Positions 6,884-49,098 of a stretch of 64,000 bases of DNA are shown one piece after another. The notes under the pieces were generated by a model. It worked only from the letters and a program-made list of their open reading frames with translations. It was not told the origin of the DNA and did not search any database. Position 1 is the first letter of the stretch. Every line of letters starts with the position of its first letter. A program made the translations under genes and the position numbers. The DNA lies in IMG/VR virus record IMGVR_UViG_3300023179_000009, positions 310,001-374,000 of that record. One strand, given 5' to 3'.

Positions 6884-7763
6884 ATTTGTGGGTTAGTTGC
6901 CCAAAGTGATATTTGATATGATTGTTGTGGTGGGTTATTGGCCCAAAATGTAGAGAAAAGTGTTTCTATGTATTTTAGAATAGAAATTTCCTAATGGAAG
7001 ATAAAAGTTGAGTTTTATTTGAGTTTTTGAAAAATTAAGTCTGGTCTGCCCAACTCTTGAGTCACTCTTTATTCACAAAAAATTTGCTTATAATTGCCTT
7101 TTATTTGCGTGTTTTTTGATGTTTATAGACGATTATAAGATGCTTATAATTCGATGTAACCAGGAAAAAGCAACGAAACCAACAGTCAAAAAGCAATTTG
7201 TATGCAATTAAAATCAAATCAAAAGTGACTAAAAGTGACTATATTGAATTGCCACTACCACCATGAGTGAATAGTGATCTTGAGTCGTTGAGTGAAATCA
7301 GCGACTCTTGCATTTTTGATACCAACTAGCCACCATGTTCAGTCCTTAGATTCTTATTCAAAACAAGGAATTTTCTATGTACGTTGTAGTTGCTTCTACG
7401 AACCTCACGCACTTCAATGTTTACGGACCATTTGTGAATGAAGAAATTGCCGAGAAATGGGGTGATGAAAATATCGGCAAAAATGACTTAGAGTGGTTTG
7501 TTGAAAAAGTGCAAAAGGAAATTGTTGTTGATGATCCAAACCTGCCAGAGCATCACTTGACATAGTTTTTTGATACCAACTAGCCACCCAACAAATGGAT
7601 ACGATATGTCTGCAATAGAATGGCTTAAGGAAAATGACATCGAACCAGACTCGGTAAGCGATACGCTTATTGCCCTGTTAGATGCTTGTGATGACCAAAA
7701 AGTGGCTAATATGATGCGAACCACACTGATCGCATTAGAGATTTTTGATACCAACTAGACCCC

Positions 7764-7791
7764 TTGACAACCAGTTTTTCAAGCGTACAAT
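7764..7791 (+). promoter_or_regulatory. Sigma70-type promoter
   Basis: TTGACA-N16-TACAAT just after motif 7747 and upstream of ORF 7843 (RBS AGGA). Confidence 0.55.
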
Positions 7792-7842
7792 TAGTTACTA
7801 GTAGTAACTAATTCGCCCCCACCCTCCCTTTTAGGAAACATT

Positions 7843-8328
7843 ATGTTCCGCTCTGATGATGAACGTGCTTGCGCTTATGCGACTATGAAGGTGCTGGAGC
7901 GTATGCTGGCAAAAGATGGAGTTATTCCGCCAGGATACCAGCGTGATTTTAGTGGATCTTCAGTGTGTGTTACTCTGCCACCAGACAGCATTGTAAAGCG
8001 TGAACTTGGTGAAAATGGGGATGGAACCGTACTGAAGACTGCTGTGCAGAATCTTTACGGTTATGCACTGTGGGCTTTTTTGATCCAAAAGTTGCGAAAG
8101 TTTAATCAGTGGAAACTGATTCGATCTGCTATTATCGAAAGTATGCAAGAGGTGATTGTTCGTGGCGGCAGCAATATGCGTGACGAAATCACAAAGGAAT
8201 ATCCTGAAGTTGCTAAGGAAATCGAAGATTTGCAGCGTGATCTGCAAATTCCTGATCGAATCGAAGAAACTCCTAGGAACTTTAAGAGTCCCAAGTTGCC
8301 TGCTACGGTGACGATAAAGATCAAGTAA
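7843..8328 (+). CDS. Hypothetical protein
   Basis: 161-aa ORF with RBS and upstream promoter. Confidence 0.75.
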   Translation: MFRSDDERACAYATMKVLERMLAKDGVIPPGYQRDFSGSSVCVTLPPDSIVKRELGENGDGTVLKTAVQNLYGYALWAFLIQKLRKFNQWKLIRSAIIESMQEVIVRGGSNMRDEITKEYPEVAKEIEDLQRDLQIPDRIEETPRNFKSPKLPATVTIKIK

Positions 8329-8401
8329 GGTATACTACCTAGGATCGTGTTGCTCTTTGACAATTTGCTGCGGTGATGAAATTGGAAAACATAGCGGACT
8401 T

Positions 8402-9144
8402 GTGCATTTAATGTATTGAAAAATGTTTCTGCCATACTATAATAAAGTATGGAAAAAACATTAAAATGCGTTAAATGCAGTCAAGATCGTGATGTTGGCA
8501 GAAAAATGTGTCGGCCATGCTATCTTGAATACAAGCGTTCTTTGGAAAAACAACGCTATCAAGATAATGGAAGAAATAATTACCAAAAGACCTGTGCTGC
8601 TTGTCAAACAAGTTTTGAGGCATGGCGTAAGAAACAAATTTTTTGTTCTAACTGCCATAAATTAAAACTCAAGTTTGCAGCAGAAAGCAAAAGTACCAAT
8701 CAATATGTAAATATTGGTGGTAAAAATGAACACAGATCTATTGCTGAAAATGTTTTAGGATATAAATTGTCTTATAACATGGTTATTCACCATGTAGACG
8801 ATAATCCTAAAAACAATAAAATTAGCAATTTAATGGTAATGGATCGAAGGACACATGGAAGGCTACATCAATATCTTGATTGCCAACGAGTCATCATAGA
8901 GAAATCTATGAATGAGAACTGTGGAAATTGCTGGAAAGCCCTGATAGTTCCCATGACTACAGCATGGTTGGAAACGACGGGTGCGAAAGTTATAAAACTA
9001 TGGGAAATTGGGTAATCAGCAGCCGAGCCTCTTTAAAATGAGGAAGGTTCAGAGACTTATGCTCACAGCACCTTAACGAGTAAAGTCGAAGGTGAAGATA
9101 TAGTCCAAATGAGTAATCATGATGTGAAAGCATCAATCTCATTG
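8402..9144 (+). ncRNA. Group I intron carrying an HNH endonuclease gene
   Basis: P AAATTGCTGGAAA (8925), Q AATCAGCAG (9014), R GGTTCAGAGACT (9046), S AAGATATAGTCC (9095); exon ends in U and intron ends in G. Confidence 0.9.
8449..9015 (+). CDS. Intron-encoded HNH homing endonuclease
   Basis: EHRSIAE...VIHHVDDNPKNNKISNLMVM...H; N-terminal CxxC pairs; ORF runs into the intron core. Confidence 0.85.
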   Translation: MEKTLKCVKCSQDRDVGRKMCRPCYLEYKRSLEKQRYQDNGRNNYQKTCAACQTSFEAWRKKQIFCSNCHKLKLKFAAESKSTNQYVNIGGKNEHRSIAENVLGYKLSYNMVIHHVDDNPKNNKISNLMVMDRRTHGRLHQYLDCQRVIIEKSMNENCGNCWKALIVPMTTAWLETTGAKVIKLWEIG

Positions 9145-9256
9145 AAAATCCGCTGGTCGCAAGACCTTGAGGGTTCGAGTCCCTCCCGCAGTATTAGACA
9201 TTTGCAGTATAATTCAATAACACTTATCATTATGGGAACTATTCGTTGTTCCCATA

Positions 9257-9691
9257 ATGATAAAATACTATACTGCAAGAAAATATAAGAAAAATATAGA
9301 TTGCTTACGTCAAACAGCACTAGATCATCGTGTGTATCGTAACGGATGGTCTGTGCGGAGCATACTACAAACTTATCCTCATTTAATATCAAGAATAAGT
9401 TTGGCATTTGATGGATCACAGGCAATAGGTCTGGCGATCCTAATAGACCATAAGAAATTAAATCAATATAAAATCCACTCTTTGAGTCGTCGTGAATATA
9501 ATTTCTATTTAAGCATCTGGCTAGACCCGTTAAAGAACGAACGGCGGTTAATGGTTTATGTGAAACCAGGATACCGGAAACGTGGAATCGGAACCGACTT
9601 GATTCGCAATTTACAATTGACCGGCCGAGTAACTTTCAAACAAGGCATACGGGGAACACGCACTTTCTATAGAAAAGCACTAAGTTCATGA
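9257..9691 (+). CDS. GNAT-family acetyltransferase-like protein
   Basis: Motif A: VYVKPGYRKRGIGTDLI. Confidence 0.6.
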   Translation: MIKYYTARKYKKNIDCLRQTALDHRVYRNGWSVRSILQTYPHLISRISLAFDGSQAIGLAILIDHKKLNQYKIHSLSRREYNFYLSIWLDPLKNERRLMVYVKPGYRKRGIGTDLIRNLQLTGRVTFKQGIRGTRTFYRKALSS

Positions 9692-9701
9692 ATTTCTAAA
9701 C

Positions 9702-9729
9702 TTGACAACGATTTGCGGATTGGTATAAT
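9702..9729 (+). promoter_or_regulatory. Sigma70-type promoter with extended -10, overlapped by a 26-bp palindrome
   Basis: TTGACA-N16-TATAAT with TG; ATAATGTAACTTATAAGTTACATTAT at 9725-9750. Confidence 0.65.
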
Positions 9730-9759
9730 GTAACTTATAAGTTACATTATACCAACTAG

Positions 9760-9815
9760 GCGGATATGCCGAAGCAAGTTTATGATTTGTGGGTTCGATT
9801 CCCACCCCGAGGACT
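9760..9815 (+). pseudogene. tRNA remnant
   Basis: tRNA-like 5' start GGCGGATATGCCG and T arm GTGGG-TTCGATT-CCCAC, but no anticodon arm. Confidence 0.4.
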
Positions 9816-9842
9816 TTTGATTAGATACTATATTAAATATAT

Positions 9843-9917
9843 GCCTAGGTAGCCCAACTGGCAGGAGGCGGATCACTCAAAATGATCACAGTGCGAGTTC
9901 GAATCTCGCCCTAGGTA
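9843..9917 (+). tRNA. trnL: tRNA-Leu(CAA), short variable loop
   Basis: GCCTAGG/CCTAGGT, GATCA-CTCAAAA-TGATC, GCGAG-TTCGAAT-CTCGC. Confidence 0.9.
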
Positions 9918-9988
9918 CTTGAAAAAAAGGCTTTTTAATGTCGAACCTTTATTTGTAAAAAATTGTGTTTGCCACACTACTATAGAGT

Positions 9989-10774
9989 ATGGCAAGACAA
10001 CGAAAATGGACAGATGATCAACTAATAGAGGCGGTTAAAACATCTCAAAGTTATTCGCAAGTTATTCAAAAACTTGGCTTGAAACTTTCTGGGGGAACTC
10101 ACGCCAATATCAAGTTAAATATTAGAAAATTAGGACTCGATACAGAACATATTACAGGTCAAGGTTGGTGTACTGGCGATTTTCATGTTCATTTAATTAA
10201 AAATTTTGTTAAGATACCTACTGAAAAAATATTGGTTAAGGACTCCGAATACACATCCACCCACAGACTAAAACATAGACTGTTTAAAGAAGGTTTGTTA
10301 GAACAGAAGTGCAGTAGTTGCGGATTAGGAACCAAATGGAATGGTAAATTTATTTCACTTCAATTAGATCACAAGGATGGTGATCGTTGTAACAATCAAA
10401 TTGACAACCTAAGAATTTTGTGTCCTAACTGCCACAGTCAGACCGAATCGTTTTGCGGCAAAAACATAAAGAAAAATAAAATAAATTGCCACAGTCAGAC
10501 TGACTCGTTTTGCGGTAAAAAGAAAAAGAAGAATAAAATAAAAGTCCGCAAAACAATTTGTGTTAACAAATGTGTTTTTTGTAATTTAGATTACGAAGCC
10601 AAAGATAAAAAACAAAAGTATTGTTCTTACGAGTGCCATAAAAAAAGTCTAAGGAAAATAGATCGTCCTTCAAAAGAACAATTGATAAATGAACTAGCGG
10701 AGAGTAATTATGTTCAAGTTGGAAAAAAATATGGCGTATCAGATAATGCGATAAGAAAATGGCTTAAACTCTAA
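9989..10774 (+). CDS. Free-standing HNH endonuclease between tRNA genes
   Basis: CSSCG...LQLDHKDGDRCNNQIDNLRILCPNCHSQT; C-terminal HTH-like segment (YVQVGKKYGVSDNAIRKW). Confidence 0.88.
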   Translation: MARQRKWTDDQLIEAVKTSQSYSQVIQKLGLKLSGGTHANIKLNIRKLGLDTEHITGQGWCTGDFHVHLIKNFVKIPTEKILVKDSEYTSTHRLKHRLFKEGLLEQKCSSCGLGTKWNGKFISLQLDHKDGDRCNNQIDNLRILCPNCHSQTESFCGKNIKKNKINCHSQTDSFCGKKKKKNKIKVRKTICVNKCVFCNLDYEAKDKKQKYCSYECHKKSLRKIDRPSKEQLINELAESNYVQVGKKYGVSDNAIRKWLKL

Positions 10775-10783
10775 GTTATTTCT

Positions 10784-10856
10784 GGGGCGTTCATCTAATG
10801 GTCTAAGATGTCACTCTTATAAGGTGGTCAAGAAAGTTCGATTCTTTCACGCCCTA
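10784..10856 (+). tRNA. trnI: tRNA-Ile(UAU)
   Basis: GGGGCGT/ACGCCCT, D stem ATCT/AGAT, loop CTTATAA, T arm GAAAG-TTCGATT-CTTTC. Confidence 0.8.
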
Positions 10857-11015
10857 TTTTCTACAATTTGACTCAGAAAAAAGTTCAACTCTCGTTATCT
10901 CTATTTTTTGTCATTTGACTTAAGTGTTTGATATTAAACAACTTACGTCAAATGGGAAAAACTTTCTAGTCGTAAGTCTTTGTCTGATAATACTTTAGGT
11001 TAAAGGAGCAATAAA

Positions 11016-11510
11016 ATGCCTAAGTTTGAAGTTACTATTGAGCGAGAAGTTCCTTGTTATCGTGAACGTGCTACTGTGGTAGTAGAGGCTGATTGTGCAG
11101 AAGATATTGAAGACAATTTTGATTTTGCTTTATTGGATGATATTGAATTAGATTGGGAAGAAGTTATGGAAGGTCATGGTGGTTTTCCGTGTGACTATGA
11201 CATTTGGAGCGTAGACTCTGTTGACGAATCTATGCCTACTGATATTGACTTGAAAACGTCTTAGGAACTTATCATGCGTTTGCTCATGGGCTTTGTTCAA
11301 GAGCCAAAACTTGAGATGCGTTTAAGTATAATCTGTCAGGTTTGCAAACTGAGTGTTGCGACTCGTTCCAATTTTGATGTCGTGATTCTCGGAACACGCA
11401 CCAAGTACAATGTTTGCAAATGTGGCAGAGAAATAGAATCGCCTGATACCAACTACAAGCGTAGGTGGCGATACTGGAATAAAAAAGTTAATTTCCATAA
11501 AGAGAATTAA
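11016..11510 (+). other. Two small hypothetical CDS (11016-11264 acidic; 11274-11510 Zn-ribbon-like CxxC...CxC)
   Basis: RBS GGAG upstream of 11016. Confidence 0.65.
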
Positions 11511-11511
11511 T

Positions 11512-12195
11512 ATGCCTTCACAAATTACTAAAACTGTTTATTCATTTTCTGAGTTACTCAAAACCGGAAAAGAATCTGCTATCGAACGTGCTAGATGCCG
11601 CCTGAAGGAAATTGCGCTCAGTGATGATTGGTATGAATATGAGATTTCGGTATGGAAGAGTGCATTAGAGCAAGTTGGTTTTGTCCGTCCTGAGATTAAC
11701 TTTAGTGGTTTTGGCTCTCAGGGTGATGGTGCAAGTTTTACTAGCTCGTGTGATACTGAACGATTGTTTTGGTACAGTACCCACAAGATTGTTGGCAAGA
11801 ACTGCATTAAGCCTACAAAGCGTACCGGACTAGATGAGGATTTTCTTCCGTGGCTGGTAAGTCAGATTGGCGGGCAGTATGGTTATTGTTCGGGCATCAA
11901 GCGGTTAGGATCGAAGATTATTGAAGGGCTGTCTTTTTCTGTTGATCGAATTGATAACCACTACTCGCACGAGAATACGTGTCGATTGGTTGTTAAGGAT
12001 ACGACATTGAGTGATACCGACTATGTTCGGGTACAGAACTGGGTTTCGGATCTGGAAAATCTGCGTCTCAGGATTTGTCGGGCAATTTATTCGGGACTAG
12101 AGATTGAGCATGATTATCATGTGTCCGACGACAACCTGACTTCTTTGGATGAAATTAACGGTTATCACTGGGACATTAACGGGAGGATGGAATGA
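11512..12195 (+). CDS. Conserved phage/ICE protein (family often labelled 'antitoxin of toxin-antitoxin stability system')
   Basis: VYSFSEL...AIERAR...DDWYE...INFSGFGSQGDGASF motif. Confidence 0.45.
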   Translation: MPSQITKTVYSFSELLKTGKESAIERARCRLKEIALSDDWYEYEISVWKSALEQVGFVRPEINFSGFGSQGDGASFTSSCDTERLFWYSTHKIVGKNCIKPTKRTGLDEDFLPWLVSQIGGQYGYCSGIKRLGSKIIEGLSFSVDRIDNHYSHENTCRLVVKDTTLSDTDYVRVQNWVSDLENLRLRICRAIYSGLEIEHDYHVSDDNLTSLDEINGYHWDINGRME

Positions 12196-12749
12196 ACAAA
12201 ACTACGTTCCGGGCTACGTTGGTCGAATCGAGCGATAGCGATTTTGAGGACATGGTTGATAGTGCCGGTACTCTGTGCATTAAAAATGATGCTGGTTATT
12301 TCCTTTGTGGCGGAGATTCTATAGAGTTTACGAATCATCGTGCTTCTTTTAATGGCAATACCGTTAAGGTAAAAACCAAGATTGGTAACACTTTTGTTTT
12401 TGAACTCAACAGCAAGCGTGATGTGGATGATGTGCTTCATAATCTGCAAGACGCTGCTGAGATTCTAAAGTTGATGGGATACGATTCTGCCAGCATTTCA
12501 ATTTACAATGTTGTTGAAGAAGTAGCCGAATTGGCTGGAGTATAAAATGTTCAAGAAATGGCGAGTTGATTATGTTGGTTGGGATTTAACGAATCTTTTT
12601 TCTACGGGTTCTAGACTTAATGGCGGCGGCTTTTTGGGCGGTGCTGCGCCCTATAAGTATTGGCGTGTTGGTCCGTTGATGTTCAAGCATTATTGGTAAC
12701 GAATACCAACTAGAGTGAGTGTTCCACTCACTCGTTATAAAGGATTTAT

Positions 12750-13496
12750 ATGCTCACTATCATCGACTCTGTCACGGAAGTCAGTTTGTATTCGGGTGAC
12801 GTTACGGTTGACCTTGGTTTGATTCGTAATTTGACTCATGCCGTTAGTATTTTTGGCGGTTTGAGCAAGCCTGATAAAATGCCGTGTTATTGCTACAATC
12901 TGCCAGCAAGTCGTTGTAAGATGGGCAGCAAACTGAATACGGTTCCGGGCAGTGTTTGCTACGGTTGTTACGCCGCTGACGAACTGTCGTGGGTGAAGCG
13001 TAAGAATGCTGCTAATGGCAAGTGGGCGTTGACTCGTTACACGATGCACACGGTACAGCGGGCATTGCAGCGGCGGTTTGAATCGTTGAGCGATCCGCTT
13101 TGGGTTCCCGCTATGGTTTACGCTATCAATCACTATGCCCGTAAGGGCAGTGATTATTTCCGGTGGCATGATAGTGGCGATATTCAGGACCACAATCATT
13201 TCCAGAATATCATGACTGTGTGCGAGTATACTCCTTCGGTAAAACATTGGTTACCGACTCGGGAGTATGCTATTGTCCGGGGGTTTTGTTATCCTGATAA
13301 TCTGTGCGTGCGGTTGTCTGCCCATATGGTTGATGGCATGCCGCCTGATTTTGATATACCAACTAGCACGGTAAGCACTGGGTCGCCTGTGACCGGCGTC
13401 CGTTGCAATGCTCCTTCGAATGATGGGCGTTGTGGATCGTGCCGCTGGTGTTGGGACCGTAATGTCACGAATGTGGATTATCACCATCACAATTAG
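12750..13496 (+). CDS. GP88-like Cys-rich phage protein
   Basis: YNLPASRC, GSVCYGCYA, YFRWHDSGD, HWLPTRE, C-terminal CGSCRWCW. Confidence 0.7.
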   Translation: MLTIIDSVTEVSLYSGDVTVDLGLIRNLTHAVSIFGGLSKPDKMPCYCYNLPASRCKMGSKLNTVPGSVCYGCYAADELSWVKRKNAANGKWALTRYTMHTVQRALQRRFESLSDPLWVPAMVYAINHYARKGSDYFRWHDSGDIQDHNHFQNIMTVCEYTPSVKHWLPTREYAIVRGFCYPDNLCVRLSAHMVDGMPPDFDIPTSTVSTGSPVTGVRCNAPSNDGRCGSCRWCWDRNVTNVDYHHHN

Positions 13497-13717
13497 GATG
13501 GTTTATGTGGTTGTTTGCCAGTATAGCGGATGATTCCGTTTTTGCCGGGGATTTTACCTTTGTACATAATGTCGATATAGGTAATCAGGTCGGCTGCGAC
13601 TGGGATGCCGTATAATGGTGGGTACTGACCTAGGGCATCGTTAATACTAGGATACAATCCTAGTTTGGCACCTGTCCGGGTGGCATTCTCTTTTAGCAAC
13701 CAGTCTTTAAATTTCAT
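13493..13717 (-). CDS. Small protein with capsid-targeting-like N-terminus, antisense to the array
   Basis: MKFKDWLLKE; CGTAAATA just upstream (13722-13729, minus strand). Confidence 0.7.
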   Translation of the reverse strand: MKFKDWLLKENATRTGAKLGLYPSINDALGQYPPLYGIPVAADLITYIDIMYKGKIPGKNGIIRYTGKQPHKPS

Positions 13718-13758
13718 ATTGTATTTACGATACCAACTACTGTTTCTGGAGGACCATT

Positions 13759-16700
13759 ATGACTGCCAAGGCTTTTTGTGTTGATTATAAAAGTAGCGTG
13801 ATGAATCGTATTGCCGCTGTTGATGCTATTTTGGCGGCTGAGATTGATAGTCAGGCACGTTGCTTGACGTTGGAGCAGGTAGATCGTTTGGAAAAGATTG
13901 ACCGATTTATCCAGGTACTTGTTCGAACGAACAACGGCAGGTTTTTAACGGCTGTTCAAAATGTTCGCTGGTACTGTGGATTGATTGAGAACCATTACCA
14001 GATGGTTAAGGCCGCTATCGGTTCGGAGCCTGCAAGCAAGTACAACACGGATTGGGTTCGAGATATTAGTATTCCAGTGGAGAGGGAGAATGACTGATCG
14101 TAAATTTTATCGCACGGTGATTCACGTTGAAGTGCTGAGTGAAGAGCCGTATACGTTTAGTGGCAATCTCGTGGATGTTGCCAATGATATTAGTTCGGGC
14201 GATTGCAGCGGGGTAGCCCGGACGATTCAGGAAGAAACGTGTGATGGTGCCCGGATGGCACAGTTGCTCGTGGCACAAGGGAGTGATCCTGAATTCTTTA
14301 TGTTGGATGACTCTGGAAACGATACCAACTAGCCTGATATGAATACCAAACAACTTATAGAAGTCCTTGTAAAAATTTGTGTATATGCTCAGGATCATAG
14401 TGGCGACATCTCGGCTTGGGGGCCGAGGAACAGCGACTATCTTCATGAGGCCATGGAACACACGAGTTACGTTGTGGCGTGTTTTCTGGCACAGAATACT
14501 CGTGGCGGGAATGATGGTGTTTCTTTTGACGTTGTGCTTGACAAGCTGGCTGGTCCGGTATTGTCCGAGCGGCAATGGACTCGTGTAATCACTAATCTTG
14601 TCAATGTCTTGGAGGGTAGTCATGAGCGTATTTGATTCAGTTTACGAGCGTTTACAACTTGCGGATAAGATTGCCCATTTGTTTGATTTGGAAGGCGTGC
14701 GGGTGGATGACTTGGAAGAGATTTGTGGTTTTGTCAAGAAAATGGTTGAGAACCATGACAAGGTTACCAAAGTCGCTGAGTCTAAGGCTGTGGAGGCTTT
14801 GTGTGAGTGGTACCGAAACGAAGCGGACATGGACGATATTGCCCGAGAGTACAGTCGTATACTTGGCGTTGGTCCTGTGCAGGTGAAGGGTGAGCAAGCT
14901 GCTGACAGTGACGTTTTTGAAAATGGCGAACGAATTGAATTTGAAGAACAAAACGAATCGGAGGAACAATGACCGCCACTGAAGAGATGGTTAGCGTTGA
15001 GTTTTATCTTTTGGGCGACGATTACACTTGGGACACGGACTTCATTTCGTTTCCTAAAAAGTTGTATGCCCGATACTTGAAGGATAGTAATCCTAGTCCG
15101 ATTTTGGATTGGGTTTACGCTAACGTAAAGTTTCGCAAGAACATTTGTATGGTTGGCATTTATAACGACGAGTCTGTTGACATGGAGGAAGATGATGCCG
15201 AAGTTTAAAGTACACGCTCAACGCACACAGGTGCAGTCTCAAGTGTTTTATGTTACAGCGGCTAGTCGAGAGGAACTTGAGAAGAAACTTCAAGATGTTA
15301 GTTTTGATGAGATGGATAACGTGTTTGATGAAGGGGAAGTAGACTCGATTGATTACGAGGTTATAGAGACTTCTCCTTGTAAAAGTGGCCCGTCTACCTT
15401 TGCTAGCGACGAGTTGCAAGAACAGTTGGATAATGTTTGATACCAACTAGCGACCCAGGAGGTTTCTATGAAAATCATTTCTAACGACTTGTATTGTCAA
15501 ATTGAGCGGTGGGACGATCCGGGCGATTACCCGAATGGCTTGGCTGCGGGTCCGCTGCCGAGTTATTCCTATTGTGAATTTGGTGGCGAGTTTGTTTTTG
15601 AAACTGAAAATGACGAGGAACTGAAAGAACTTGATAATGTTGATGATTGGATTGGCGATTGGGTGAGAGATCAGTGTGATATTGGCGGTCATATTTATCC
15701 TTCGTACCGTTGTGAGGTTGAGGGTAATCGTTGTGTGGTGACGATTACCGAAGCCGAAGTTGAAGAGTACGATCCGGCTGACGATTATTGATACCAACTA
15801 AGAACTTGGAGAAAAACAATGAAGACTTTTAACAAAGACTATAAGGCTCGCAACCAAATCATTTTTGGTGACAACAATACGGATAATTGGCCGGGTGGCG
15901 TTAGGCGAATCGAGTCGCTCAGTCTTAAGCAACTGAATGATTTGATTCAAAATGACTTTATTGATCTTGAAGATTGCCAGAATTGCTCTCCTACTGTCGA
16001 GGCTTTTCTAGACTTCATGAAAAAGTATCCGAAGGTTGAGGCCCACGGTTACGCCGTGAGTCACACCCGAGATGATTATCGTGTAAGTCTTGAAGGTTTG
16101 GCTTTTGCTGGCGATGTGAACAAGCAAATGCTTCTTGATTTTGTACACCTGTGTCGTGATGCTGACGAGTTTGTTGCCGATGATAACGAACTGTACGCTT
16201 GGTGGGACTGATACCAACTAAGGGCGTGGAGGTGCTACATGAATGACTTTAGAACAGATCATCTTTCTGGCGAAGCCTTGAAGATTGCAAGTGCAATTTC
16301 AGAAATGATCAAGAATGATAAGGGTGAAGATCCCCATGGTGGCGGATGTACTGCTTTTTATACACCAGAGCATTGGCGAGAGCGTGGTGAAAAATATGGC
16401 AAAGACAGCGTGTTGATTCTGTGTCACGATGGCGGTGACTTGGCTCTTTATTGCAATCTTGACTATGCCTACTATCGTGGCCAGGAGCGCATCAATAGTT
16501 GTTTGAAGAATCTTGGTTATTATGTTGAGGCTTGTACTTGTTGGTACAGTGCTGTTTATCCTCTTTAATTAATACGAACTAGTAAGTCACTCAATTATTA
16601 GGAGAATAAAAAATGGGAATGGGTAGTTTTGCTTGCGATAGTTACGTCATCAGTTACGACAATCTCAAGAAGTTGTGTCCCAAGGAAGTCGAGGCCATCG

Positions 16701-40950: not shown

Positions 40951-41001
40951 TACCAACTAGGTGAGCGTGAGGGTTGTTCCTCACGCTCACCTAGTCCTTT
41001 T

Positions 41002-41667: not shown

Positions 41668-42129
41668 ATGAAACTCATCCTGATGCGTGGCGTGAGCGGC
41701 AGCGGCAAAAGCACGCTGGCCGAAAAGATTTGCAGCGAACAGGAATTTGCTGTAATTGTTTCAACCGATCACTATTTCATGGTCGATGGTGAATACCGAT
41801 TCGACCCGAAGCGTCTCGGTGAGTATCACTCCGCTAACGTGAACCGAACCGAACAGTTCATGGTTGAACGGTGTGCGTGTATCATCGTGGACAACACGAA
41901 CACACAAGCGTGGGAAATGAAACCCTACGTCGAGTTGGCCATGAAGCACGGCTACGCTATCGAAATCCATCAGCCCGATCCGGTCAGTTTCGAGGAACTG
42001 ATGCAGCGGCAGGCAAACCGGGCCGACAGCAACAAGGCTCTGCCCGCCGAAGTGGTAAAGCGGATGCTCGACCGATTCGAGCACGATGTGACAGTGGCAA
42101 AGATTCTCCAATCGAAGCGACCCTTCTGA
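41668..42129 (+). CDS. P-loop kinase, AAA_33 / polynucleotide-kinase (N4BP2-like) family
   Basis: LILMRGVSGSGKSTLA, VSTDHYF, IIVDNTN...EMKPY. Confidence 0.82.
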   Translation: MKLILMRGVSGSGKSTLAEKICSEQEFAVIVSTDHYFMVDGEYRFDPKRLGEYHSANVNRTEQFMVERCACIIVDNTNTQAWEMKPYVELAMKHGYAIEIHQPDPVSFEELMQRQANRADSNKALPAEVVKRMLDRFEHDVTVAKILQSKRPF

Positions 42130-42186
42130 TACCAACTAGAAGGAGTGTGATAAGCACTCCCCCTAGTTCTTTTTCCAGAAAGGAAC

Positions 42187-43286
42187 ATGATGGATCACGA
42201 ACAGGCCATGCGGAATGCCATGAAGCGTGTGATGACGTTCATGGATAGCCTCTCGCCGGGGAACAGTCCCCGTGCCACAACAACTGACAGCCCGATGATT
42301 CACTTCAATGGCTGGAATCGGTGGTGTGTCAAGTTCGACACACACAGCGGTAAAAACTATCACGCATTTGGTTCTACGCTCGTCGAAGCGTTCAATCGGT
42401 TGGTCGATGAACCAACCGTGTCTGATACCAACTAGACCAGTGTTCCCTTCCCCTCTTCAAAGGAGTCTGCCATGCAGATCAATTTCCTCGGTGAGAACTA
42501 CAACGTCGAGCCGGTTGCCATGCGATACACAGACGGCAATCTGGCAATTCAAGTTCTGCGTGCCGATGGGCCTTTCGGTATGCTCTCGACCAATGTCGAG
42601 GGTGTGCAACTCGCCCCGAACGAGTTCTGCGTGAAAACGTGGAGCGAGAACGATCCGTGGGCATTGGATCTTATCCGCCAGTGTCCGCAGTTCGAGAACA
42701 CTGGACGCACGTTCCGTAGCGGGTTCGTCAGCGGCCCGATCTACCGGATGGTTGGTTGATACCAACTAGATCGATACCGAACTACGGCCCTCGTCGTTCA
42801 AGACAGAAAGGACGCTGTAGTGTCATGCCAAAGCGGTGGCCACCGCACGGCAATCGTTGCCAAAGTACACGGCAACGATCAGCACACTACGGAAATGCGG
42901 GTGCGATACCCGCCGGGGTCAGCATACACTGTAGGCCAAAAGCCGAACAACGAGGCGTCTATCCCACGCCTACAACCCCGAAAGGGGAGAGAGTGTATGG
43001 GGTCTAATACCAACTAGGGGGACATGGGGAGACAACCCATGTCCCCCTAGTTCTTTTATGAAAGGCAAACATGGTTCCACGAGAAATGTATCGGTGGGAA
43101 TATTTCCATGCGATGGGCAACAACTGCCGATTGCATGGAATGTCATCTCACGATGCCCAAACCGTGATCGATAAGGCCGCTGGTTTCGGCAACGATTTCG
43201 AAAACTTCTGGACAGGATTTCTGTACGGCAGAAGTGATCAAATCGCTTCTTTGCCAAGCAAAGATTCCGTGGTCTGGGTTTTTTAG
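42187..43286 (+). other. Array cargo CDS (42187-42435; 42472-42759 DUF4313-like; 43071-43286)
   Basis: 42472 has LAIQ...PFGMLSTN...FCVKTWSEN. Confidence 0.65.
42770..43005 (+). ncRNA. Candidate structured non-coding RNA cassette
   Basis: No RBS-supported ORF; many nested stems (see findings). Confidence 0.5.
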
Positions 43287-43385
43287 TCTGTCACATTTCG
43301 ACAGGCCGTGCGTAATACCAACTAGAACGGTATCGAGAATGGCTCTCGACGCCCACAACCCTCCTGTCCAGAAAGGACAACTGTC

Positions 43386-43700
43386 ATGAAGTTCATCCTC
43401 AATGCGTTTTCTCTAAACATGATCGGCACATTTCCGGCGACCATCACGGTCGAGGAAGTCTCGACCCACGAAGCCTGTGTCGAGGCTCACGGTGTCACCA
43501 GTGGCGTCGGCCACCCCGATACGGCGGCGGTGTTCGCTTCGATTCTCGGTACGCCCGTTCCGATGAATCGTGCAACCGTCAGTCTCGTGTCTGGTGATCG
43601 TGTGCTGGTGGGCCAATACAGTGGCCCTCGTCTGCCCGAGGGTGCAACTACGCTGCCCGAGGGTGCCACGATCAAGTGGCTCGTCGTCTCTGTCAACTGA
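43386..43700 (+). CDS. acrIII-1: DUF1874 / AcrIII-1 cyclic-oligoadenylate ring nuclease homologue (anti-CRISPR type III)
   Basis: ILNAFSLNMI...SGVGHPDTA...PMNR...LVGQYSGPRLPEG: GH, NR and RLPEG signature of the STIV B116/SIRV1 gp29 family. Confidence 0.8.
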   Translation: MKFILNAFSLNMIGTFPATITVEEVSTHEACVEAHGVTSGVGHPDTAAVFASILGTPVPMNRATVSLVSGDRVLVGQYSGPRLPEGATTLPEGATIKWLVVSVN

Positions 43701-43771
43701 TACCAACTAGCAGGGTGTGGTGATGAGCCACACCCTGCTAGTCCTTCAACCCCCAACCCTGAAAGGCAATC

Positions 43772-44149
43772 ATGCCCTACACCGCTTGCGTCCTCGAAGA
43801 GTCATCCCGCACCACGCTCGTGGAGTGGATGTATTCCAATCACGAAGTGCCCGAGCACTTCGAAATCGTCGGCCACCACTGCACCGTCGATCTGAAGCCC
43901 ATCGCCAAAAGCATGGGCTGCGATCTGGATGGCCAGCGACACGAAATGCGTGTCGTTCGTTTCGGTCGTCTCGACGGCATCATGGCTGTCGAAGTCGAGA
44001 CGGTTGTTCCCAGCAAGAACGACCGCAAGCACATCACCTTGTGCTACGACAAGCCGAATGGCTGGAAACCGAAGCAGTCGAACGACATCGTGGAATGGAC
44101 TGACATCGAACCGTTCGTTCTGCACGGTGTCGTGAAGGAATGTGCGTGA
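43772..44149 (+). CDS. 2H phosphoesterase (RNA-repair type)
   Basis: Two HxT-like motifs: HHCTV and HITL. Confidence 0.7.
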   Translation: MPYTACVLEESSRTTLVEWMYSNHEVPEHFEIVGHHCTVDLKPIAKSMGCDLDGQRHEMRVVRFGRLDGIMAVEVETVVPSKNDRKHITLCYDKPNGWKPKQSNDIVEWTDIEPFVLHGVVKECA

Positions 44150-44212
44150 TACCAACTAGGGGGATGTGATGAAAGTCACATCCCACCTTTCCTTTTCACA
44201 AAAAGGCCGATC

Positions 44213-45325
44213 ATGAACACTGATTTTCAAATGATGGTCGAGGCGCAGGTGGGTGACAAAACGGTCACCGTTTATTGCGAAACCCATGCAGAAGCGTGGG
44301 CTGCGGAAAATGCCATCCGCAACATGGCACGACAGTTCGGCTTGCAAGTGGGCACGGTGACAATCACCGTCAACGACACACCACGGTGGCGAGTCGATAC
44401 AATCTGGCTCAATCCTCCATACAGTGTTGTGCAGGATCAGTGATACCAACTAGGGGGGTGTGAACAACACCCCCCTCTTCTCTTGAAAGGAGAACGACGA
44501 TGGAAAACGAAGGCCAGATGCGAAGTAGGACATGCACGTTCGTCAACAGAACGTACATGTTCGAACACATCGAAGAGGCACTGATGTTTGCTCCTCCGGA
44601 GCAGACGATCAGCATCGAGATTCTGCCAGATGGACGCTACAGTGTTACCGAAACGTGGCGGGATGCGGAGCCTGCCGACCGCAGACGGTTCGCCAGCATC
44701 TGCAATCGTGGCGGTAACTGATACCAACTAGGGGGACACGGGGAACAACCGTGTCCCCCTAGTTCCGTTTTCCCTCAAACCAGAGAGGCCATCATGACGA
44801 TCAAAGTTCAGATTCCGGGCCGAGTCACAGCCTCTGCCCTTGTCGAGTCCGGACTCGACGCTTCTAGCAACGGAGTGCTGACATTCCACGCTTTCAGCGA
44901 CGCCATGAAAGCGAGGGTGTTGGAACTGATTGCCGCAGGGCAACACGTGGTGGTCAAGGCCACCACCGAAGTGCCCCGAACCGGCGATTGGTTCGAGCCA
45001 GCACAGTGATACCAACTAGGTGGACACGAGGACACAACTCGTGTCCCCCTAGTTTCGTTTCTCCTAACCCCGGAGTTTTTCCATGAACGATACAATCAAA
45101 TGGCGAAACTTGCCCGCCCGCATGACCCCGAAGGTCGATCCCTCGTTCGATGAACTGTGTCGTGCGATGAAGAATCGTACACAGATCACGGTCATCGGAG
45201 CATGGGGCCATCCCATCACTGGCCTCGTCAACAAAATCGAGGCAGAGGGTGGTAGCGGTCGATGCTGGAACGTGACGATCAGTCACGGCATCCACACCAG
45301 CACGATCTTCGTCCGCACGGCGTGA
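44213..45325 (+). other. Array cargo CDS (44213-44443, 44500-44721, 44794-45009, 45083-45325)
   Basis: Each ends exactly on the TGA of a motif copy. Confidence 0.78.
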
Positions 45326-45393
45326 TACCAACTAGGGGGACACAGGACACAAGCCTGTGTCCCCCTAGGTTCGTTTCCACCCCGGAGGATCAC

Positions 45394-45945
45394 ATGATCC
45401 ACATCGCTAGTTTCGTTCGGCGTCAAACCGCCGACAGTCGGTTCAGCCACTGGACGCTGGACGACAATGCTCTCGTCCAAAGGATCGAAGCCGGTCTGCC
45501 CAATGCCAAACCCGGATACCGGGATGGCGTGGTGCTCGTGCCGGTCGATCCCGATGGCTTCTTCAGTGCCACGGTCACGCTGACCAACGGCCAAAAGCTG
45601 GTGGGCGAGTTCGCCAGCCGTCGCACCGGCGAAGAGCCTCGTAAGAGTCTCGCCGCCATCGGCCAGAAGCAGCCCGCCGGTACGGTGTGGGTCGTGCTCT
45701 ACGCCCACCACGTTCTCGCTGAGAAAAACGAGAACGAGACCGATGCCGACTGGGAAGTGGTCAGCGTCAACGCCAGCCCGAGCGTGGACGCTGAACCGGC
45801 TCCCATGCCGCCGGAAACGCTGATCGCCAACCACTTCGAGTTGGATGGCGGGACGGCGACGAAGATGAGCGACAGTGACTTCGTCGCATCGCTCAAGGCC
45901 AGCGTCCTCTACTGGAAGGACAAGGCACAGGTTCAGCCTGAGTGA
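45394..45945 (+). CDS. DUF3228-like protein
   Basis: FVRRQT, KPGYRDGVVLVPV, RRTGEEP, VVLYAHHVLAE, DWEVVSVNA, PM.PET, GGT. Confidence 0.7.
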   Translation: MIHIASFVRRQTADSRFSHWTLDDNALVQRIEAGLPNAKPGYRDGVVLVPVDPDGFFSATVTLTNGQKLVGEFASRRTGEEPRKSLAAIGQKQPAGTVWVVLYAHHVLAEKNENETDADWEVVSVNASPSVDAEPAPMPPETLIANHFELDGGTATKMSDSDFVASLKASVLYWKDKAQVQPE

Positions 45946-45979
45946 TACCAACTAGAACAGTGTCGAGGGGGATGGCAAC

Positions 45980-47405
45980 GTGCTGTCCCCCTCGACGGTT
46001 CGATTCCTTCAGGAGAACAAAATGGAGTTGCACATCTACCAGCTCGGGGGTCTCGACAACGACTCCCTGATCGGCATCGCTCACGACACGCACACGATGC
46101 GGTCGCTGATCGAACTGGCCGAACGCCGGGGTGCCACGGGCGTGAGCCTGCACGGCACCGTCCCGCACTTGCGGGAGAGCGTGAGCGGTGAGTTCACGCT
46201 GGACGAGGCCAAGCGGGAATACAACAGGGCCGTCGATGCGGTCAACGCCGTCATCATGGACGGCATCGACCCGGCGTTCGGGATGCAGCCCTGATACCAA
46301 CTAGGGGACTACAGGAACGGCCTGTAGTCCCCTAGTTGCGTTCCTGCCCCGGAGACTTCGCCATGATTTCTGAAGGGCCGAACGATCTTTTCATTGAAGA
46401 CGGCGAAAGCCTGTCCTCGATCATCGAACGGATCGGCAAGAAGTGGCCCGGTGCCACACTCGATCATTGCAAGATCGAGCACAACGACTGGTTCGAAAAA
46501 ATGATCGTGAAGTTGGTATCGCCTCAGTGATACCAACTAGGGGGACACGAGGACACAACTCGTGTCCCCCTAGGCTCGTTTTCCTCAACAACAGGAGCCT
46601 TCCCCATGAAGGTGCAAAAGAAAGTTTTCCGTTTCCACGCCAAGCGTGGGCAGCAGGATATGGTGATCGAACTGCTGCGGCAGTATGGTCAACCGTGGAC
46701 GACCACGAGCGCCGAGGGCATTCGTGTGTTCGTCGAGTTGCCCGAGGGCGTCAGCAAGCGGAGCGTCGATAAGATGCTGCGTGATGCTGGTGTGCCGGGT
46801 GCGGCATCATGCCGTAACGTCCCCATCGTGGACGTTGGATATGATGCCGGAAGGATGGAGCCTGCCCTTGAACGGCTCTATCGAGCCGGATACTTGAACC
46901 GAAAGGTCAAGATCTCGTGGGGCGGCACACGGGTCACCATCGGCTATCTTCGGGCAGAAGATTACTGCGACGGGCCGGGATTCGGCTTGTACGTAGACCC
47001 CGACAAAAAGATGAACGGCTACCAACTGCCGACATCGGCAGTTCAAGGAACACCGGGACAGAAACTGCCGTGGTGTTGATACCAACTAGGGGGACACAGG
47101 ACACAAGCCTGTGTCCCCCTAGGTTCGTTTCCCCTCCAACAAGAAAGATTCTTCACATGAAGAACTTCCTCAAGCTGCTCCTCTGCTCTGTTCTGGTCGG
47201 ATCGTGCTTCGCCGCCATCATCTGCGGCTACGTGATGGTCGGAACGGCCATGGGGTATTTCCACCCCAACTACGTTCCCGAAGCGGGTGAAACGCTTCTC
47301 GGTTTCTACGTCACGCTGTACACATGCAGCGTGGCCCCATTCCCGTTGCTGGTGCTGCTCATCAGTACCAGTACGGCCGTTGCGAGTGTGTTCGAGCATC
47401 GGTGA
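45980..47405 (+). other. Array cargo CDS (45980-46294, ~46363-46530, 46606-47079, 47157-47405 membrane protein)
   Basis: Each ends on a motif TGA. Confidence 0.75.
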
Positions 47406-47415
47406 TACCAACTAG

Positions 47416-47601
47416 AACACCACACGAGTGAACACCGTCTACGGCTGGTCATCCTCACCCCCTGCTTGCAGGCGTAGAGGGTGCCAAACCGGAAGCGTGG
47501 GCCGACATGCGGGTTCGATCCCCGTAGTCGTTTCCTGTCTGGTGCGGATCATAGGGGCTGATCGTAAATGCTCCGCCAGCCGTAGACGGCTTCACCTTGT
47601 T
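47416..47601 (+). ncRNA. Candidate structured RNA with a tRNA-like T arm
   Basis: 14-bp terminal stem 47435-47448/47576-47589; GCGGG-TTCGATC-CCCGT at 47509-47525. Confidence 0.5.
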
Positions 47602-47681
47602 AATACCAACTAGGTTGGTGTCGAGTGAGTCACAACGTGTGACACACTGACGTTCGGTAGGTTTCTTTCAGGAGGATCGCC

Positions 47682-48056
47682 ATGAGCAAGCCCAAGGTCA
47701 AGTCCGAGCCCGTCGCCCGCACCGCCAAGCCCAAGTCGGCCAAGCAGTTGGCCAAGCGGGCGGCGAACATCGCTGCCTGGGAAGCCCGCAACGCCGCCCT
47801 TCGGAACGGCACCTTCAAGGGCGTGGTCGAAAAGGCCGCTGAGGCGAAGGCCCGACACGTGGCCGAGCGGATGGCCGAGACGGAGAAGGCCCGCACGATG
47901 GTGGTGACCCACATGAGCCACCCGGTCTACGGCCAACGGCTCAGCCGTTTCCTCAACGGCAGCAAGGCCGACCCGAGGTTGCTGGCCAACGTGGTGATCC
48001 CCAACTGGATCAAGACGCAGGGTATCGTCGTCGATCACGTGCGACCCACCACGTGA
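47682..48056 (+). CDS. Basic Ala/Lys-rich hypothetical protein
   Basis: AGGAGG RBS, MSKPKVK start, high-GC codons. Confidence 0.75.
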   Translation: MSKPKVKSEPVARTAKPKSAKQLAKRAANIAAWEARNAALRNGTFKGVVEKAAEAKARHVAERMAETEKARTMVVTHMSHPVYGQRLSRFLNGSKADPRLLANVVIPNWIKTQGIVVDHVRPTT

Positions 48057-48306
48057 TCTGATACCAACTAGGGGGGTGTGAGTGATGCAAGTCGCTCACA
48101 CCCCCCAGCGGGTTGACGGCCCGCCATCCTGTCCCCGTCTCGACCCCTGAGTCATCCACACTCATACGCTTCGAGTGACTCAAGTCGGGGGATGGGATAA
48201 CTGGCCGTCGCCAGTCTTCCACCTAGTGATACCAACTAGGGTGGTGTCGAGTGAGTCACAACGTGTGACACACCGACGTTCGGTAGGTTTCTTTGGGAGT
48301 CATGCC

Positions 48307-48675
48307 ATGAGCAAGACGAAGAGCAAGGTCAAGCAGCCGGAGGCCGTGGTCGAGCAGCCGGTCGCCCCGGTCGAGACGAAGAGCATCGCTTGGCCGGTCG
48401 AGGCCGAGAAGGAACTGCTCTCCTCCGGTGGCTACATCAGCGGCGGTCGTTTCTATCTGCCGATGAATCGTGCGGCGGGTACGTGCGAGTACACGAGCAA
48501 GGCTGGTCGCACGGCGACCTACTGCATCTTCCGGGCCGACACGAACGGCTACAACTTGCTGCCCATCAGCAAGAGTGGCAAGGTCGCTCACAGCGACATC
48601 AAGCAGAACGGCAAGTACCTCAACGTGGGCTTCCGTGTCAGCAGCGAACGTGTCAGCAAGGTCGTGATGCGGTAG
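48307..48675 (+). CDS. Hypothetical protein; shares leader and N-terminal style with 47682
   Basis: GGGAG RBS, MSKTKSKVK start. Confidence 0.75.
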   Translation: MSKTKSKVKQPEAVVEQPVAPVETKSIAWPVEAEKELLSSGGYISGGRFYLPMNRAAGTCEYTSKAGRTATYCIFRADTNGYNLLPISKSGKVAHSDIKQNGKYLNVGFRVSSERVSKVVMR

Positions 48676-48735
48676 TGATACCAACTAGGGGGGAGCGTGG
48701 TGAAGAGCCACGCTCCCCCCGACTGTCGAACGGAG

Positions 48736-48770
48736 TGCCGCAGGGTCGAGCGATGACCCTGCGGCACTTT
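48736..48770 (+). terminator. Intrinsic terminator near the array end
   Basis: AGTGCCGCAGGGTC-N7-GACCCTGCGGCACT-TTT. Confidence 0.6.
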
Positions 48771-49098
48771 TCGAAACTCAGAAACTCTGAGTGATACCAA
48801 CTAGAGGGGTGGGTACCCTATGCCACTGCTGGCGGATACCGCACCACCCTATTGTTTATAACCCTTTAATTTTTTATTTTTATCTAATAGGGTTTTGTTT
48901 TTCAAGAACTCTGCGGCAAAAATTTCCGCCGCCGAATTTTTCTCACCCTCTATTAGGCTCAAAAAATTATTAAAAGCCGTTTTCTGTAAAAATCGCCGTT
49001 AAAAATTTTTGCAAGTACTACTATGATTATAATGAAGACTTAAAAGTATTTTATTTCGCTTTAAAATTTGTAAAATAATTAAAAATATAAGGACAATT

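What the first reader, a model, noticed from the sequence alone, without database searches (positions are those of the whole stretch)
7318..48804. The motif donates stop codons in two frames, leaving shared 'DTN/NTN' protein tails
Seen: most cargo ORFs stop on the motif's first triplet (TGA/TAA). At least 13 instead read GAT/AAT-ACC-AAC-TAG (or TAA) and end ...DTN*/NTN*, e.g. 7758, 14332, 22361, 22986, 24784, 25100, 27822, 29586, 30850, 31457, 31735, 36767, 38990, 42435. The third frame (IPTR/S) is open. Inference: an incoming ORF need not bring its own stop, so even a truncated or newly made ORF joined at the site becomes a terminated gene. That fits site-directed capture or de novo gene birth.
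Basis: partly seen in the sequence, partly recalled or inferred. Interest (0 to 1): 0.62.

Follow-up and report, generated by a model that had tools for sequence, protein, structure and literature searches.

The report
Phage cassette joint with built-in stops
A 13-base signal repeated about 120 times between the small genes of a 459-kb freshwater phage ends the upstream gene in two of three reading frames and marks where genes are swapped between related phages; it looks like a compact promoter/terminator joint, not a trap for broken or newborn genes.

Summary
T[GA]ATACCAACTAG occurs 119 times (90 in the window), only on the + strand and only in a 93-kb block of a 458,813-bp virus record. In the window, 46 upstream ORFs stop on its first triplet and 16 stop on its TAG/TAA, ending ..[DN]TN. 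One ORF reads through in the open third frame. All 14 listed ends are real.

The capture and gene-birth inference is only partly supported. Orthologues in related phages switch between own stop, frame-A stop and frame-B stop after small indels, so the motif works as a two-frame backstop. But all four families tested are full length. Homologues outside such arrays end within 0-10 residues of the same point, and relatives at about 50% identity already carry the DTN tail.

Homology blocks, cassette permutations and strain deletions break exactly at the motif. No integrase, serine recombinase, Y1 transposase or reverse transcriptase was found. A second huge-phage lineage has the same architecture around a different motif (AATTGTACCCTA), with the same fixed downstream spacing.

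My best reading is inferred, not shown: a single-element promoter for a phage sigma factor, overlapped by a hairpin. It resembles the promoter/stem-loop cassettes (PeSLs) of T4-type phages and doubles as a recombination joint.

The parts
1..48804 (+). Window part of the co-oriented cassette array. The array starts upstream at genome 265,394 (window -44,606) and ends with the last motif copy at 48792-48804.
7317..7329 (+).
48792..48804 (+). Last motif copy. GC drops from about 0.59 to 0.33 within 40 nt after it.
48805..48850 (+). Terminal non-coding element after the last motif. It is conserved in relative L202. Contigs from independent samples bridge this boundary.
22381..22986 (+). 201-aa ORF ending ..DDTN* on the motif's TAG (frame B). 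Its orthologues at 50% identity end the same way, except in L198/L199, which lack the motif there and run 9 aa further.
21660..22361 (+). 233-aa ORF ending ..LLNTN* (frame B). Homologues outside such arrays end within 0-6 aa of the same column.
38511..38990 (+). HAD_SAK_2 protein ending ..HLNDTN* (frame B), with its full-length domain intact.
42187..42435 (+). 82-aa ORF ending ..SDTN* (frame B). Its orthologue in L202 carries a 13-nt insertion and ends on the motif's TAA (frame A).
45394..45945 (+). DUF3228 cassette that stops on the motif's TGA (frame A) at the modal native C-terminus. It is absent, motif to motif, from a strain in run X5, and it sits in swapped order in L202.
12750..13496 (+). 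GP88 / phrog_1392-like ORF that reads through a motif copy at 13354-13366 in the open frame C (..IPTS..). This is conserved in L197 and L198.
32539..32571 (+). Example of the perfect G-run/C-run hairpin. Its 5' arm starts with AACTAG of the motif and its 3' arm ends CTAGTT, followed by a T-rich tail. There are 34 strong hairpins, 31 of them in the distal half.
24341..24353 (+). Motif copy lying between tRNA-Asn (24255-24335) and tRNA-Lys (24369-24442). Other copies precede tRNA-Leu (9843) and tRNA-Glu (33774).
34491..34503 (+). Motif copy after a minus-strand HNH gene and 29 nt before the start of a metallophosphatase gene. No upstream + strand ORF ends here, and T0 is C.
44147..45019 (+). Three cassettes missing, exactly motif to motif (860 nt), from a divergent strain in run X7. 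The same holds for 46292-47403 (1111 nt, X7) and 45323-45943 (620 nt, X5).

Best explanation
The window lies in a 93-kb early or accessory gene block of an uncultured 459-kb freshwater phage. The 13-mer is the conserved core of the joint between expression modules.

Shown:
- It is a sharply bounded element under strong purifying selection, on one strand only.
- It is kept in relatives whose cassette proteins are only about 50% identical.
- It stands before protein genes, tRNA genes and multi-gene blocks alike.
- Homology blocks, cassette permutations and natural deletions between related phages begin and end exactly on it.
- Upstream ORFs use its TGA/TAA or its TAG as their stop, and orthologues switch between these after small indels.

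Inferred:
- The motif is a single-element promoter read by a phage sigma factor. Three sigma-like genes are present, and one is the second gene of the array.
- Transcription would start about 7 nt after the motif, at a conserved pyrimidine-purine step.
- In the distal half, a G-run/C-run hairpin whose 5' arm begins inside the motif would stop read-through from upstream, while transcripts that start inside that arm escape it.
- Tight packing puts the end of each gene onto the next gene's promoter. Because the motif happens to hold stops in two frames, it becomes a backstop that tolerates 3' indels.
- Recombination between the repeated joints, whether ordinary phage recombination on short homology or an unknown enzyme, shuffles the cassettes. 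This is what is described for PeSLs of T4-type phages.
For: Distribution and strand.

Logo: no conservation upstream of T0, a near-invariant core, then N5, Y18 (77%) and R19 (88%).

Spacing: in hairpin-less copies the Shine-Dalgarno never starts before position 18 (mode 19-21) and the start codon never comes before position 30.

Placement: copies lie before tRNA genes and after a minus-strand gene. In the proximal half, copies precede rIIA, the SNF2 helicase and multi-gene blocks.

Sigma factors: there are three Sigma70_r2 / phrog_351 ORFs, one at genome 267164-267826 inside the array.

Sister system: G003 (381 kb), G004 and L205-L209 carry wAATTGTACCCTA + N6 + TGT. They show the same core-to-YR spacing, the same polarity and the same rising density. 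An isolated copy lies 90 nt upstream of a sigma-like ORF.

Precedents: compact single-element promoters read by phage sigma factors, also found upstream of the sigma gene itself (phiEco32 TAATGTATA, phage 7-11; PMC4331800).

Hairpins: 34 strong ones, and in 29 the 5' arm starts within the motif.

Recombination joints: L197 blocks break at motif edges. L202 cassettes are permuted, with alignments starting at T0 and ending at T0+12. Strain deletions of 860, 1111 and 620 nt are exactly motif to motif.

PeSL anatomy and role: PMC2839356 and PMC4122927.

Stop switching.
Against: No RNA data were available. No listed run holding this DNA is RNA, so no transcription start, terminator or processing site is shown.

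The motif matches neither a sigma-70 -35/-10 promoter nor a T4 late promoter.

R19 could simply reflect purine-rich Shine-Dalgarno sequences and G-rich hairpin arms.

Some copies leave only 9 nt before the start codon (18810), which fits a start at +19 badly.

In L198/L199 the motif is absent at one junction and the downstream gene overlaps the upstream one. The motif is therefore dispensable for at least that gene.

Only about half of the hairpins have a convincing T-run.

The excess of frame A over frame B and the GC gradient are not explained by this model.
Confidence: 0.5

Rival explanations
1. The motif is the core site of a dedicated site-specific capture system (integron-like) run by an unrecognised recombinase. 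Cassettes enter at the motif, perhaps preferentially at the distal end, and the stops in the site let captured ORFs terminate.
For: There is an exact 13-nt joint with no flanking conservation. Cassette presence/absence, replacement and permutation occur exactly at the joint. All cassettes share one orientation. Copy density and GC rise toward one end, in two phage lineages. Hairpins abut the site.
Against: No tyrosine integrase, serine recombinase, Y1/HUH transposase or reverse transcriptase was found in a 91%-complete genome. Hairpins are perfect, variable and absent from half of the copies, unlike attC. Copies also precede conserved early genes, operons and tRNAs, and one lies inside a gene. 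Distal cassettes are permuted between relatives rather than simply added at the end. All tested cassettes are full length. GC1 against GC3 shows no amelioration lag.
Confidence: 0.15
2. The motif acts at the RNA level. It would be a cleavage or binding site that cuts polycistronic early RNA into single-gene messages with 3' hairpins, as RNase III sites do in T7. Alternatively it would be a termination-reinitiation signal tied to the stop codon.
For: The stop codon is part of the motif in most copies. The hairpin directly follows, and the Shine-Dalgarno follows at a fixed minimum distance. The motif is strictly strand-specific. Its position next to tRNA genes would suit a processing signal.
Against: Copies before tRNA genes and after a minus-strand gene have no upstream ORF to couple to. 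An isolated sister-motif copy lies 90 nt upstream of a sigma-like gene. No cognate nuclease was identified. No RNA data exist.
Confidence: 0.2
3. One reading: the joint turns truncated or de novo ORFs into terminated genes, so the array is a cradle of new genes.
For: Most cassettes are ORFans in Pfam and PHROGs. The two-frame backstop is real.
Against: Four of four testable families are full length with native ends. DTN tails are shared by relatives at 50-55% identity. Codon-position GC looks like that of established coding sequence. A lack of family hits is usual for phage early genes.
Confidence: 0.05

Closest known systems
PeSLs (promoter-early stem-loops) of T4-type phages (Arbiol et al. 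2010, PMC2839356; Comeau et al. 2014, PMC4122927)
   Same: Both are short composite regulatory joints between small ORFan genes in a hyperplastic early region. In both, the upstream stop codon lies at the start of the joint, there is a G-run/C-run stem-loop, and a Shine-Dalgarno and start codon sit at the end. Indels, replacements and swaps between related phages break at the joints.
   Different: PeSLs hold a sigma-70-type -35/-10 promoter and are loosely conserved. Here there is an invariant 13-mer with no -35/-10. It occurs about 120 times in one 93-kb polar block, supplies the stop itself in two frames, and comes with a GC gradient. The host phage is a 459-kb genome not shown to be T4-type.
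Single-element promoters of phage-encoded sigma factors (phiEco32 TAATGTATA; phage 7-11 TGATGT..TATA; PMC4331800) and T4 late promoters (TATAAATA, from general knowledge)
   Same: These are compact 8-12 nt elements without a -35 box. They are specific to one phage lineage, diverge between lineages, and also occur upstream of the sigma gene.
   Different: Those phages have about 6-40 such sites. Here there is one per small gene. Promoter activity is not shown here.
Integron cassette arrays (attC, IntI)
   Same: Both are co-oriented arrays of small, mostly unknown genes. The recombination joints sit at gene ends and can overlap the stop codon. Cassette content varies between strains.
   Different: There is no IntI or other known recombinase, no imperfect attC hairpin with R''/R' cores, and each unit seems to carry its own expression signal.
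T7 early region (promoters, RNase III hairpins between genes; general knowledge)
   Same: Both have conserved short signals and hairpins between co-oriented early genes. A 5' or 3' hairpin adjoins the Shine-Dalgarno.
   Different: No T7-type polymerase was detected, although that search had no positive control. The copy number here is far higher.

Membership tests
PeSL-type regulatory cassette | Lies between small, mostly unknown genes in a plastic early region of a large phage | tested here: met
   The block holds rIIA-like, sigma, helicase, AAA and tRNA genes plus about 200 small ORFs, almost all co-oriented.
PeSL-type regulatory cassette | Contains a sigma-70-like -35/N17/-10 early promoter | tested here: not met
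   No conserved -35/-10 is present. The logo is one 13-nt block, and the sigma-70-like scan is at shuffle level, 21 against 16.6 +/- 3.6.
PeSL-type regulatory cassette | Stem-loop (G-run, loop, C-run) overlapping or next to the promoter | tested here: met
   There are 34 strong hairpins, and in 29 the 5' arm starts inside the motif. They are missing from most proximal copies. Terminator activity was not tested.
PeSL-type regulatory cassette | Differences between related phages break at the elements | tested here: met
PeSL-type regulatory cassette | Excised mini-circles with one chimeric joint | not testable with these tools
   Only contigs were available.
Integron | Adjacent tyrosine recombinase IntI | tested here: not met
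   PF00589 is absent from the genome, and the controls rang.
Integron | attC: imperfect hairpin with RYYYAAC / GTTRRRY cores | tested here: not met
   Hairpins are perfect and variable, half of the copies have none, and the flanks do not fit the cores.
IS200/IS605 or REP/RAYT elements | Y1 (HUH) transposase acting on hairpin ends | tested here: not met
   PF01797 is absent. One TnpB-like ORF is present, at genome 277156-278781.
Promoter of a phage sigma factor | A cognate sigma gene in the genome | tested here: met
   There are three Sigma70_r2 / phrog_351 ORFs, one inside the array.
Promoter of a phage sigma factor | Transcripts start at a fixed distance downstream | not testable with these tools
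   No run holding the stretch is RNA. Only indirect evidence exists: the Y18-R19 step and the lower bound on the Shine-Dalgarno position.
T7-type promoter | Single-subunit RNA polymerase gene | tested here: inconclusive
   PF00940 was not found, but nothing rang in the controls.

The most novel reading that the evidence does not exclude
Huge freshwater phages may carry a dedicated, polar gene-cassette platform. It would have a lineage-specific 12-13-nt joint (TRATACCAACTAG in one lineage, AATTGTACCCTA in another) used by an unrecognised recombination system. The rise of GC from 36% to 59% toward the distal end would then record either position-dependent GC-biased repair at a recombination hot zone or the order in which foreign genes entered.
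Probability: 0.12. Interest if true: 0.85.

Novelty: new variant of a known kind. Interest (0 to 1): 0.6.

Why it matters
Accessory and early genes of large phages turn over fast, and how they do so is known in detail only for PeSLs of T4-type coliphages and vibriophages. This case has features that make it a good natural system for study:
- The joint is an exact 13-mer that can be found by eye.
- The array covers a fifth of a 459-kb genome.
- Swaps, deletions and permutations at the joint are visible in lake metagenomes from several studies.
- A second phage lineage has the same design with a different motif.

Questions it opens include how expression modules are insulated and exchanged, how overlapping a stop codon with the next gene's signal buffers 3' indels, and what drives a 23-point GC gradient within one phage genome. 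For annotation, it also explains the recurrent ..DTN and ..NTN tails as motif-encoded, not as a protein motif.

Tried and rejected
Assembly chimera as the cause of the GC jump: rejected. The distal 6 kb is held at 0.94-0.99 of words in samples from three studies. Independent contigs bridge 48572-48978. Relative L202 ends with the same terminal element and shows the same GC rise.

Mobile-element and polymerase explanations (integron, IS200/IS605 or REP, serine recombinase, retroelement): no enzyme was found. A T7-type polymerase (no positive control) and a canonical RNA polymerase beta domain were also not found.

Searches for other holders of the motif:
- A 14-mer scan of IMG/VR gave only single chance hits, and a 17-mer scan gave none.
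- The one 465-kb contig hit (G001) has no array.
- Relatives were reached only through cassette proteins.
- INPHARED phages held no match for two DTN proteins, only a 33% DUF3228 match in Microcystis phage MaAM05, and rIIA matches of at most 32%.
- A genome-contig scan with DUF3228 found no close cellular relative, so recent capture from a sequenced bacterium is not shown.
- Literature searches for either motif string returned only primer matches.

Other ideas tested:
- Amelioration of foreign GC-rich genes: GC3 does not lag GC1 in any bin and exceeds it distally.
- Replication-linked cause of the gradient: cumulative GC skew shows no turning point at the array.
- Suppressor tRNA after the motif at 23831: this is a weak group I intron hit beside tRNA-like sequence, not a suppressor.
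- Large-scale cassette duplication: only three weak paralogue pairs were found.
- Structure in the terminal element: not significant, z = -1.6.

Caveat: many loose ends at motifs are contigs from other array positions that cross-map onto similar hairpins. I counted only joints with long flanks and an exact motif-to-motif period.


Full report
CONTEXT. The window is bases 310,001-374,000 of a single 458,813-bp IMG/VR virus record (CheckV completeness 91%, about 32% GC). It carries baseplate, rIIA-like, helicase, AAA ATPase and tRNA genes and group I introns. It is therefore a huge tailed phage. Its nearest cultured relatives share at most 32% identity in rIIA. The same DNA occurs in freshwater and lake metagenomes from several independent studies.

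THE OBSERVATION.
- Distribution. The core ATACCAACTA (up to 1 mismatch) gives 96 matches in the window against 3.4 expected. Genome-wide there are 98 exact copies. All are on the + strand, all lie between 265,394 and 358,794, and none lies elsewhere.
- Logo. It is one sharply bounded block. There is no conservation upstream. T0 is 81% T and position 1 is 94% purine. Positions 2-11 are nearly invariant and G12 is 80%. Five free positions follow, then Y18 (77%) and R19 (88%).
- ORF ends, counted over the 90 window copies. The upstream ORF of at least 40 aa stops on the first triplet 46 times and on the TAG/TAA at +10 16 times (tails DTN or NTN). It stops on its own stop within 60 nt upstream 15 times and reads through in the third frame once. 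Twelve copies have no such ORF.
Every one of the 14 listed ends is correct.
- Standard genetic code. The motif stops coincide with the ends of homologues, so the standard code applies.
- Independent conservation. The motif holds a stop codon even where no ORF uses it: T0 is T in about 70% and position 1 is a purine in 41 of 43 such copies. The element is thus conserved for its own sake, and the ORFs exploit it.

IS THE C-TERMINUS REPLACED AT THE MOTIF? I tested four families.
1. HAD_SAK_2 protein (38511-38990). The Pfam domain is complete. Phage homologues were found in 71 loci. Those aligned to the C-terminus mostly end with the conserved HLN plus 0-10 variable residues, and the window protein ends HLN-DTN.
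2. The 201-aa protein (22381-22986). Relatives at 94% and about 51% identity end ..DTN on the same motif. One relative (L198/L199) lacks the motif at this junction, runs nine residues further, and overlaps the next gene. The Asp of DTN aligns with an invariant Asp.
3. The 233-aa protein (21660-22361). There are 36 homologues, including ones at 34% identity named from Euzebya and Sinorhizobium. Those outside motif arrays end within 0-6 residues of the same column.
4. The frame-A DUF3228 protein (45394-45945). Of 120 homologues, 21 end at exactly the same column and most end within three.

Nothing is truncated. The motif sits where the gene ends anyway and replaces only a short variable tail.

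THE BACKSTOP IS REAL. Across orthologous pairs in related phages the end type is labile.
- The SNF2 helicase has the same last residues with either the motif's TGA or its own stop 4 nt upstream.
- Two genes have their own stop here and ..DTN in the relative.
- ORF 42187-42435 ends ..SDTN* here. Its L202 orthologue carries a 13-nt insertion and ends on the motif's TAA.

Small 3' indels are thus caught in two of three frames. Frame C is almost never used. Its single use is a motif embedded in a genuine GP88 / phrog_1392-like gene, and that is conserved in L197 and L198.

THE MOTIF IS THE JOINT OF MOBILE MODULES.
- Against L197, a relative at 79-90% nucleotide identity, homology blocks start just after a motif or at its first base and end at its last base, with unrelated cassettes in between.
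- L202 is the GC-rich array end of another relative, with 34 copies in 12 kb. It holds the same cassettes in permuted order. Seven alignments start within 2 nt of T0, and two end at T0+12.
- Contigs from other lake samples carry deletions of 860, 1111 and 620 nt. Each equals the distance between two motif copies, and 13-14 shared letters sit at the joint. One further deletion lies between 61-nt hairpin repeats.
- Junctions in relatives at about 67% nucleotide identity still carry perfect 12-mers.
- No tyrosine or serine recombinase, Y1 transposase or reverse transcriptase was found.

WHAT THE MOTIF PROBABLY DOES (INFERENCE).
- Copies stand before tRNA genes (9843, 24369, 33774) and after a minus-strand HNH gene. 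In the proximal half they stand before rIIA, the helicase and multi-gene blocks. The function is therefore not tied to translation termination.
- In copies without a hairpin, the Shine-Dalgarno never begins before position 18 and most often begins at 19-21. This suits a transcript starting at the Y18-R19 step.
- The genome has three sigma-like ORFs, and one is the second gene of the array.
- There are 34 strong perfect hairpins, 31 of them in the distal half. In 29 the 5' arm begins inside the motif. A transcript arriving from upstream would form the hairpin, while one starting at position 19 would lack the 5' arm.
- This is the logic described for PeSLs: stop codon, promoter, G-run/C-run stem-loop, Shine-Dalgarno, start codon, with recombination between copies shuffling ORFans (PMC2839356, PMC4122927).
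- Compact single-element promoters read by phage sigma factors, also found upstream of the sigma gene itself, are known from phiEco32 and phage 7-11 (PMC4331800).

A SISTER SYSTEM. Homologues of the DUF3228 cassette led to arrays in other phages that lack this motif but carry wAATTGTACCCTA followed by N6 and TGT. In the 381-kb record G003 there are 71 forward copies between 272.0 and 322.6 kb, and their density rises toward the end. The spacing between the core and the downstream pyrimidine-purine step is the same as here. An isolated copy lies 90 nt upstream of a sigma-like ORF. In that array most genes end on their own stops in the AT-rich part of the element, and only six use a stop inside the core. 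Stop donation is thus a by-product of what the motif happens to spell.

UNEXPLAINED.
- GC rises from 0.36 to 0.59 along the array and falls to 0.33 within 40 nt of the last copy.
- The same rise is seen in L202 (0.53 to 0.63) and in G003 (0.38 to 0.55).
- Motif density and GC correlate (Spearman 0.78).
- GC3 does not lag GC1, so simple amelioration of foreign genes is not indicated.
- GC skew shows no replication landmark at the array.
- The threefold excess of frame A over frame B is also unexplained.

VERDICT. It is not supported in its strong form (capture of truncated ORFs or gene birth). The system works like a PeSL array but fails the PeSL promoter criterion. It is larger and more regular than described cases and recurs with a different motif in a second huge-phage lineage. 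I rate it a new variant of a known kind. The promoter function is inferred and unproven.

NOTE ON OPERATOR RULES. The reads tool was given 6,000 letters. No alternative genetic code was used.

Noticed in passing
window 10000-48840; also L202:1-11951 and G003:C1:271000-322700: GC climbs steadily from about 0.36 to 0.59 along the array (GC3 reaches 0.9) and drops to 0.33 right after the last motif. The same gradient appears in a relative and in the sister-motif array of another huge phage. No amelioration signature was seen, and GC correlates with motif density (rho 0.78).
   Followed up: partly
G003:C1:272015-322629, G004:C1:38242-88856, L205-L209: Other huge freshwater phages carry the same kind of polar array built on a different motif (AATTGTACCCTA + N6 + TGT). 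They share cassette families with this array (DUF3228, DUF6011, Kyano_Gp96, L12-like).
   Followed up: partly
window 8868-9123 and 23883-24091: There is a group I intron at 8868-9123 (70 bits) and a second, weaker hit at 23883-24091 (41 bits, below gathering). The second lies beside tRNA-like sequence just after a motif copy and may be an intron-split tRNA gene.
   Followed up: no
window 9989-10774 (+) and 33849-34454 (-): HNH endonuclease genes sit next to tRNA genes inside the array. The second is one of the few minus-strand genes in the block.
   Followed up: no
window 33419-33446: A perfect sigma-70 consensus promoter (TTGACA, 16 nt, TATAAT) lies 35 nt after a motif copy and before ORF 33469-33741. 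It is the only one of its kind in the distal array.
   Followed up: no
L193:2156-3781 (genome 277156-278781): A TnpB-like ORF (Cas12f1-like TNB domain plus IS605 OrfB HTH) lies inside the proximal array. There is no Y1 transposase in the genome.
   Followed up: partly
window 45323-45383 and 47077-47137; 47602-47650 and 48228-48276: Near-identical motif-plus-hairpin units (97% over 61 nt) recur at non-adjacent joints. One strain deletion (45060 to 47133) lies between such units, so the longer repeats also recombine.
   Followed up: partly
L198:3700-3740 and L199:1225-1262: In one relative the joint between the orthologues of 22381-22986 and 23007-23417 has no motif. The first gene runs 9 codons further, and the second starts in an ATGA overlap.
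   Followed up: partly
window 48805-48850: A short element after the last motif is conserved in relative L202 and contains a TACCCTAT stretch reminiscent of the sister motif. No significant fold was found.
   Followed up: partly
genome 34792-34956 (-), 159075-159254 (+), 267245-267409 (+): The phage encodes three sigma-70 region-2 proteins (phrog_351). Only the third lies in the array.
   Followed up: partly
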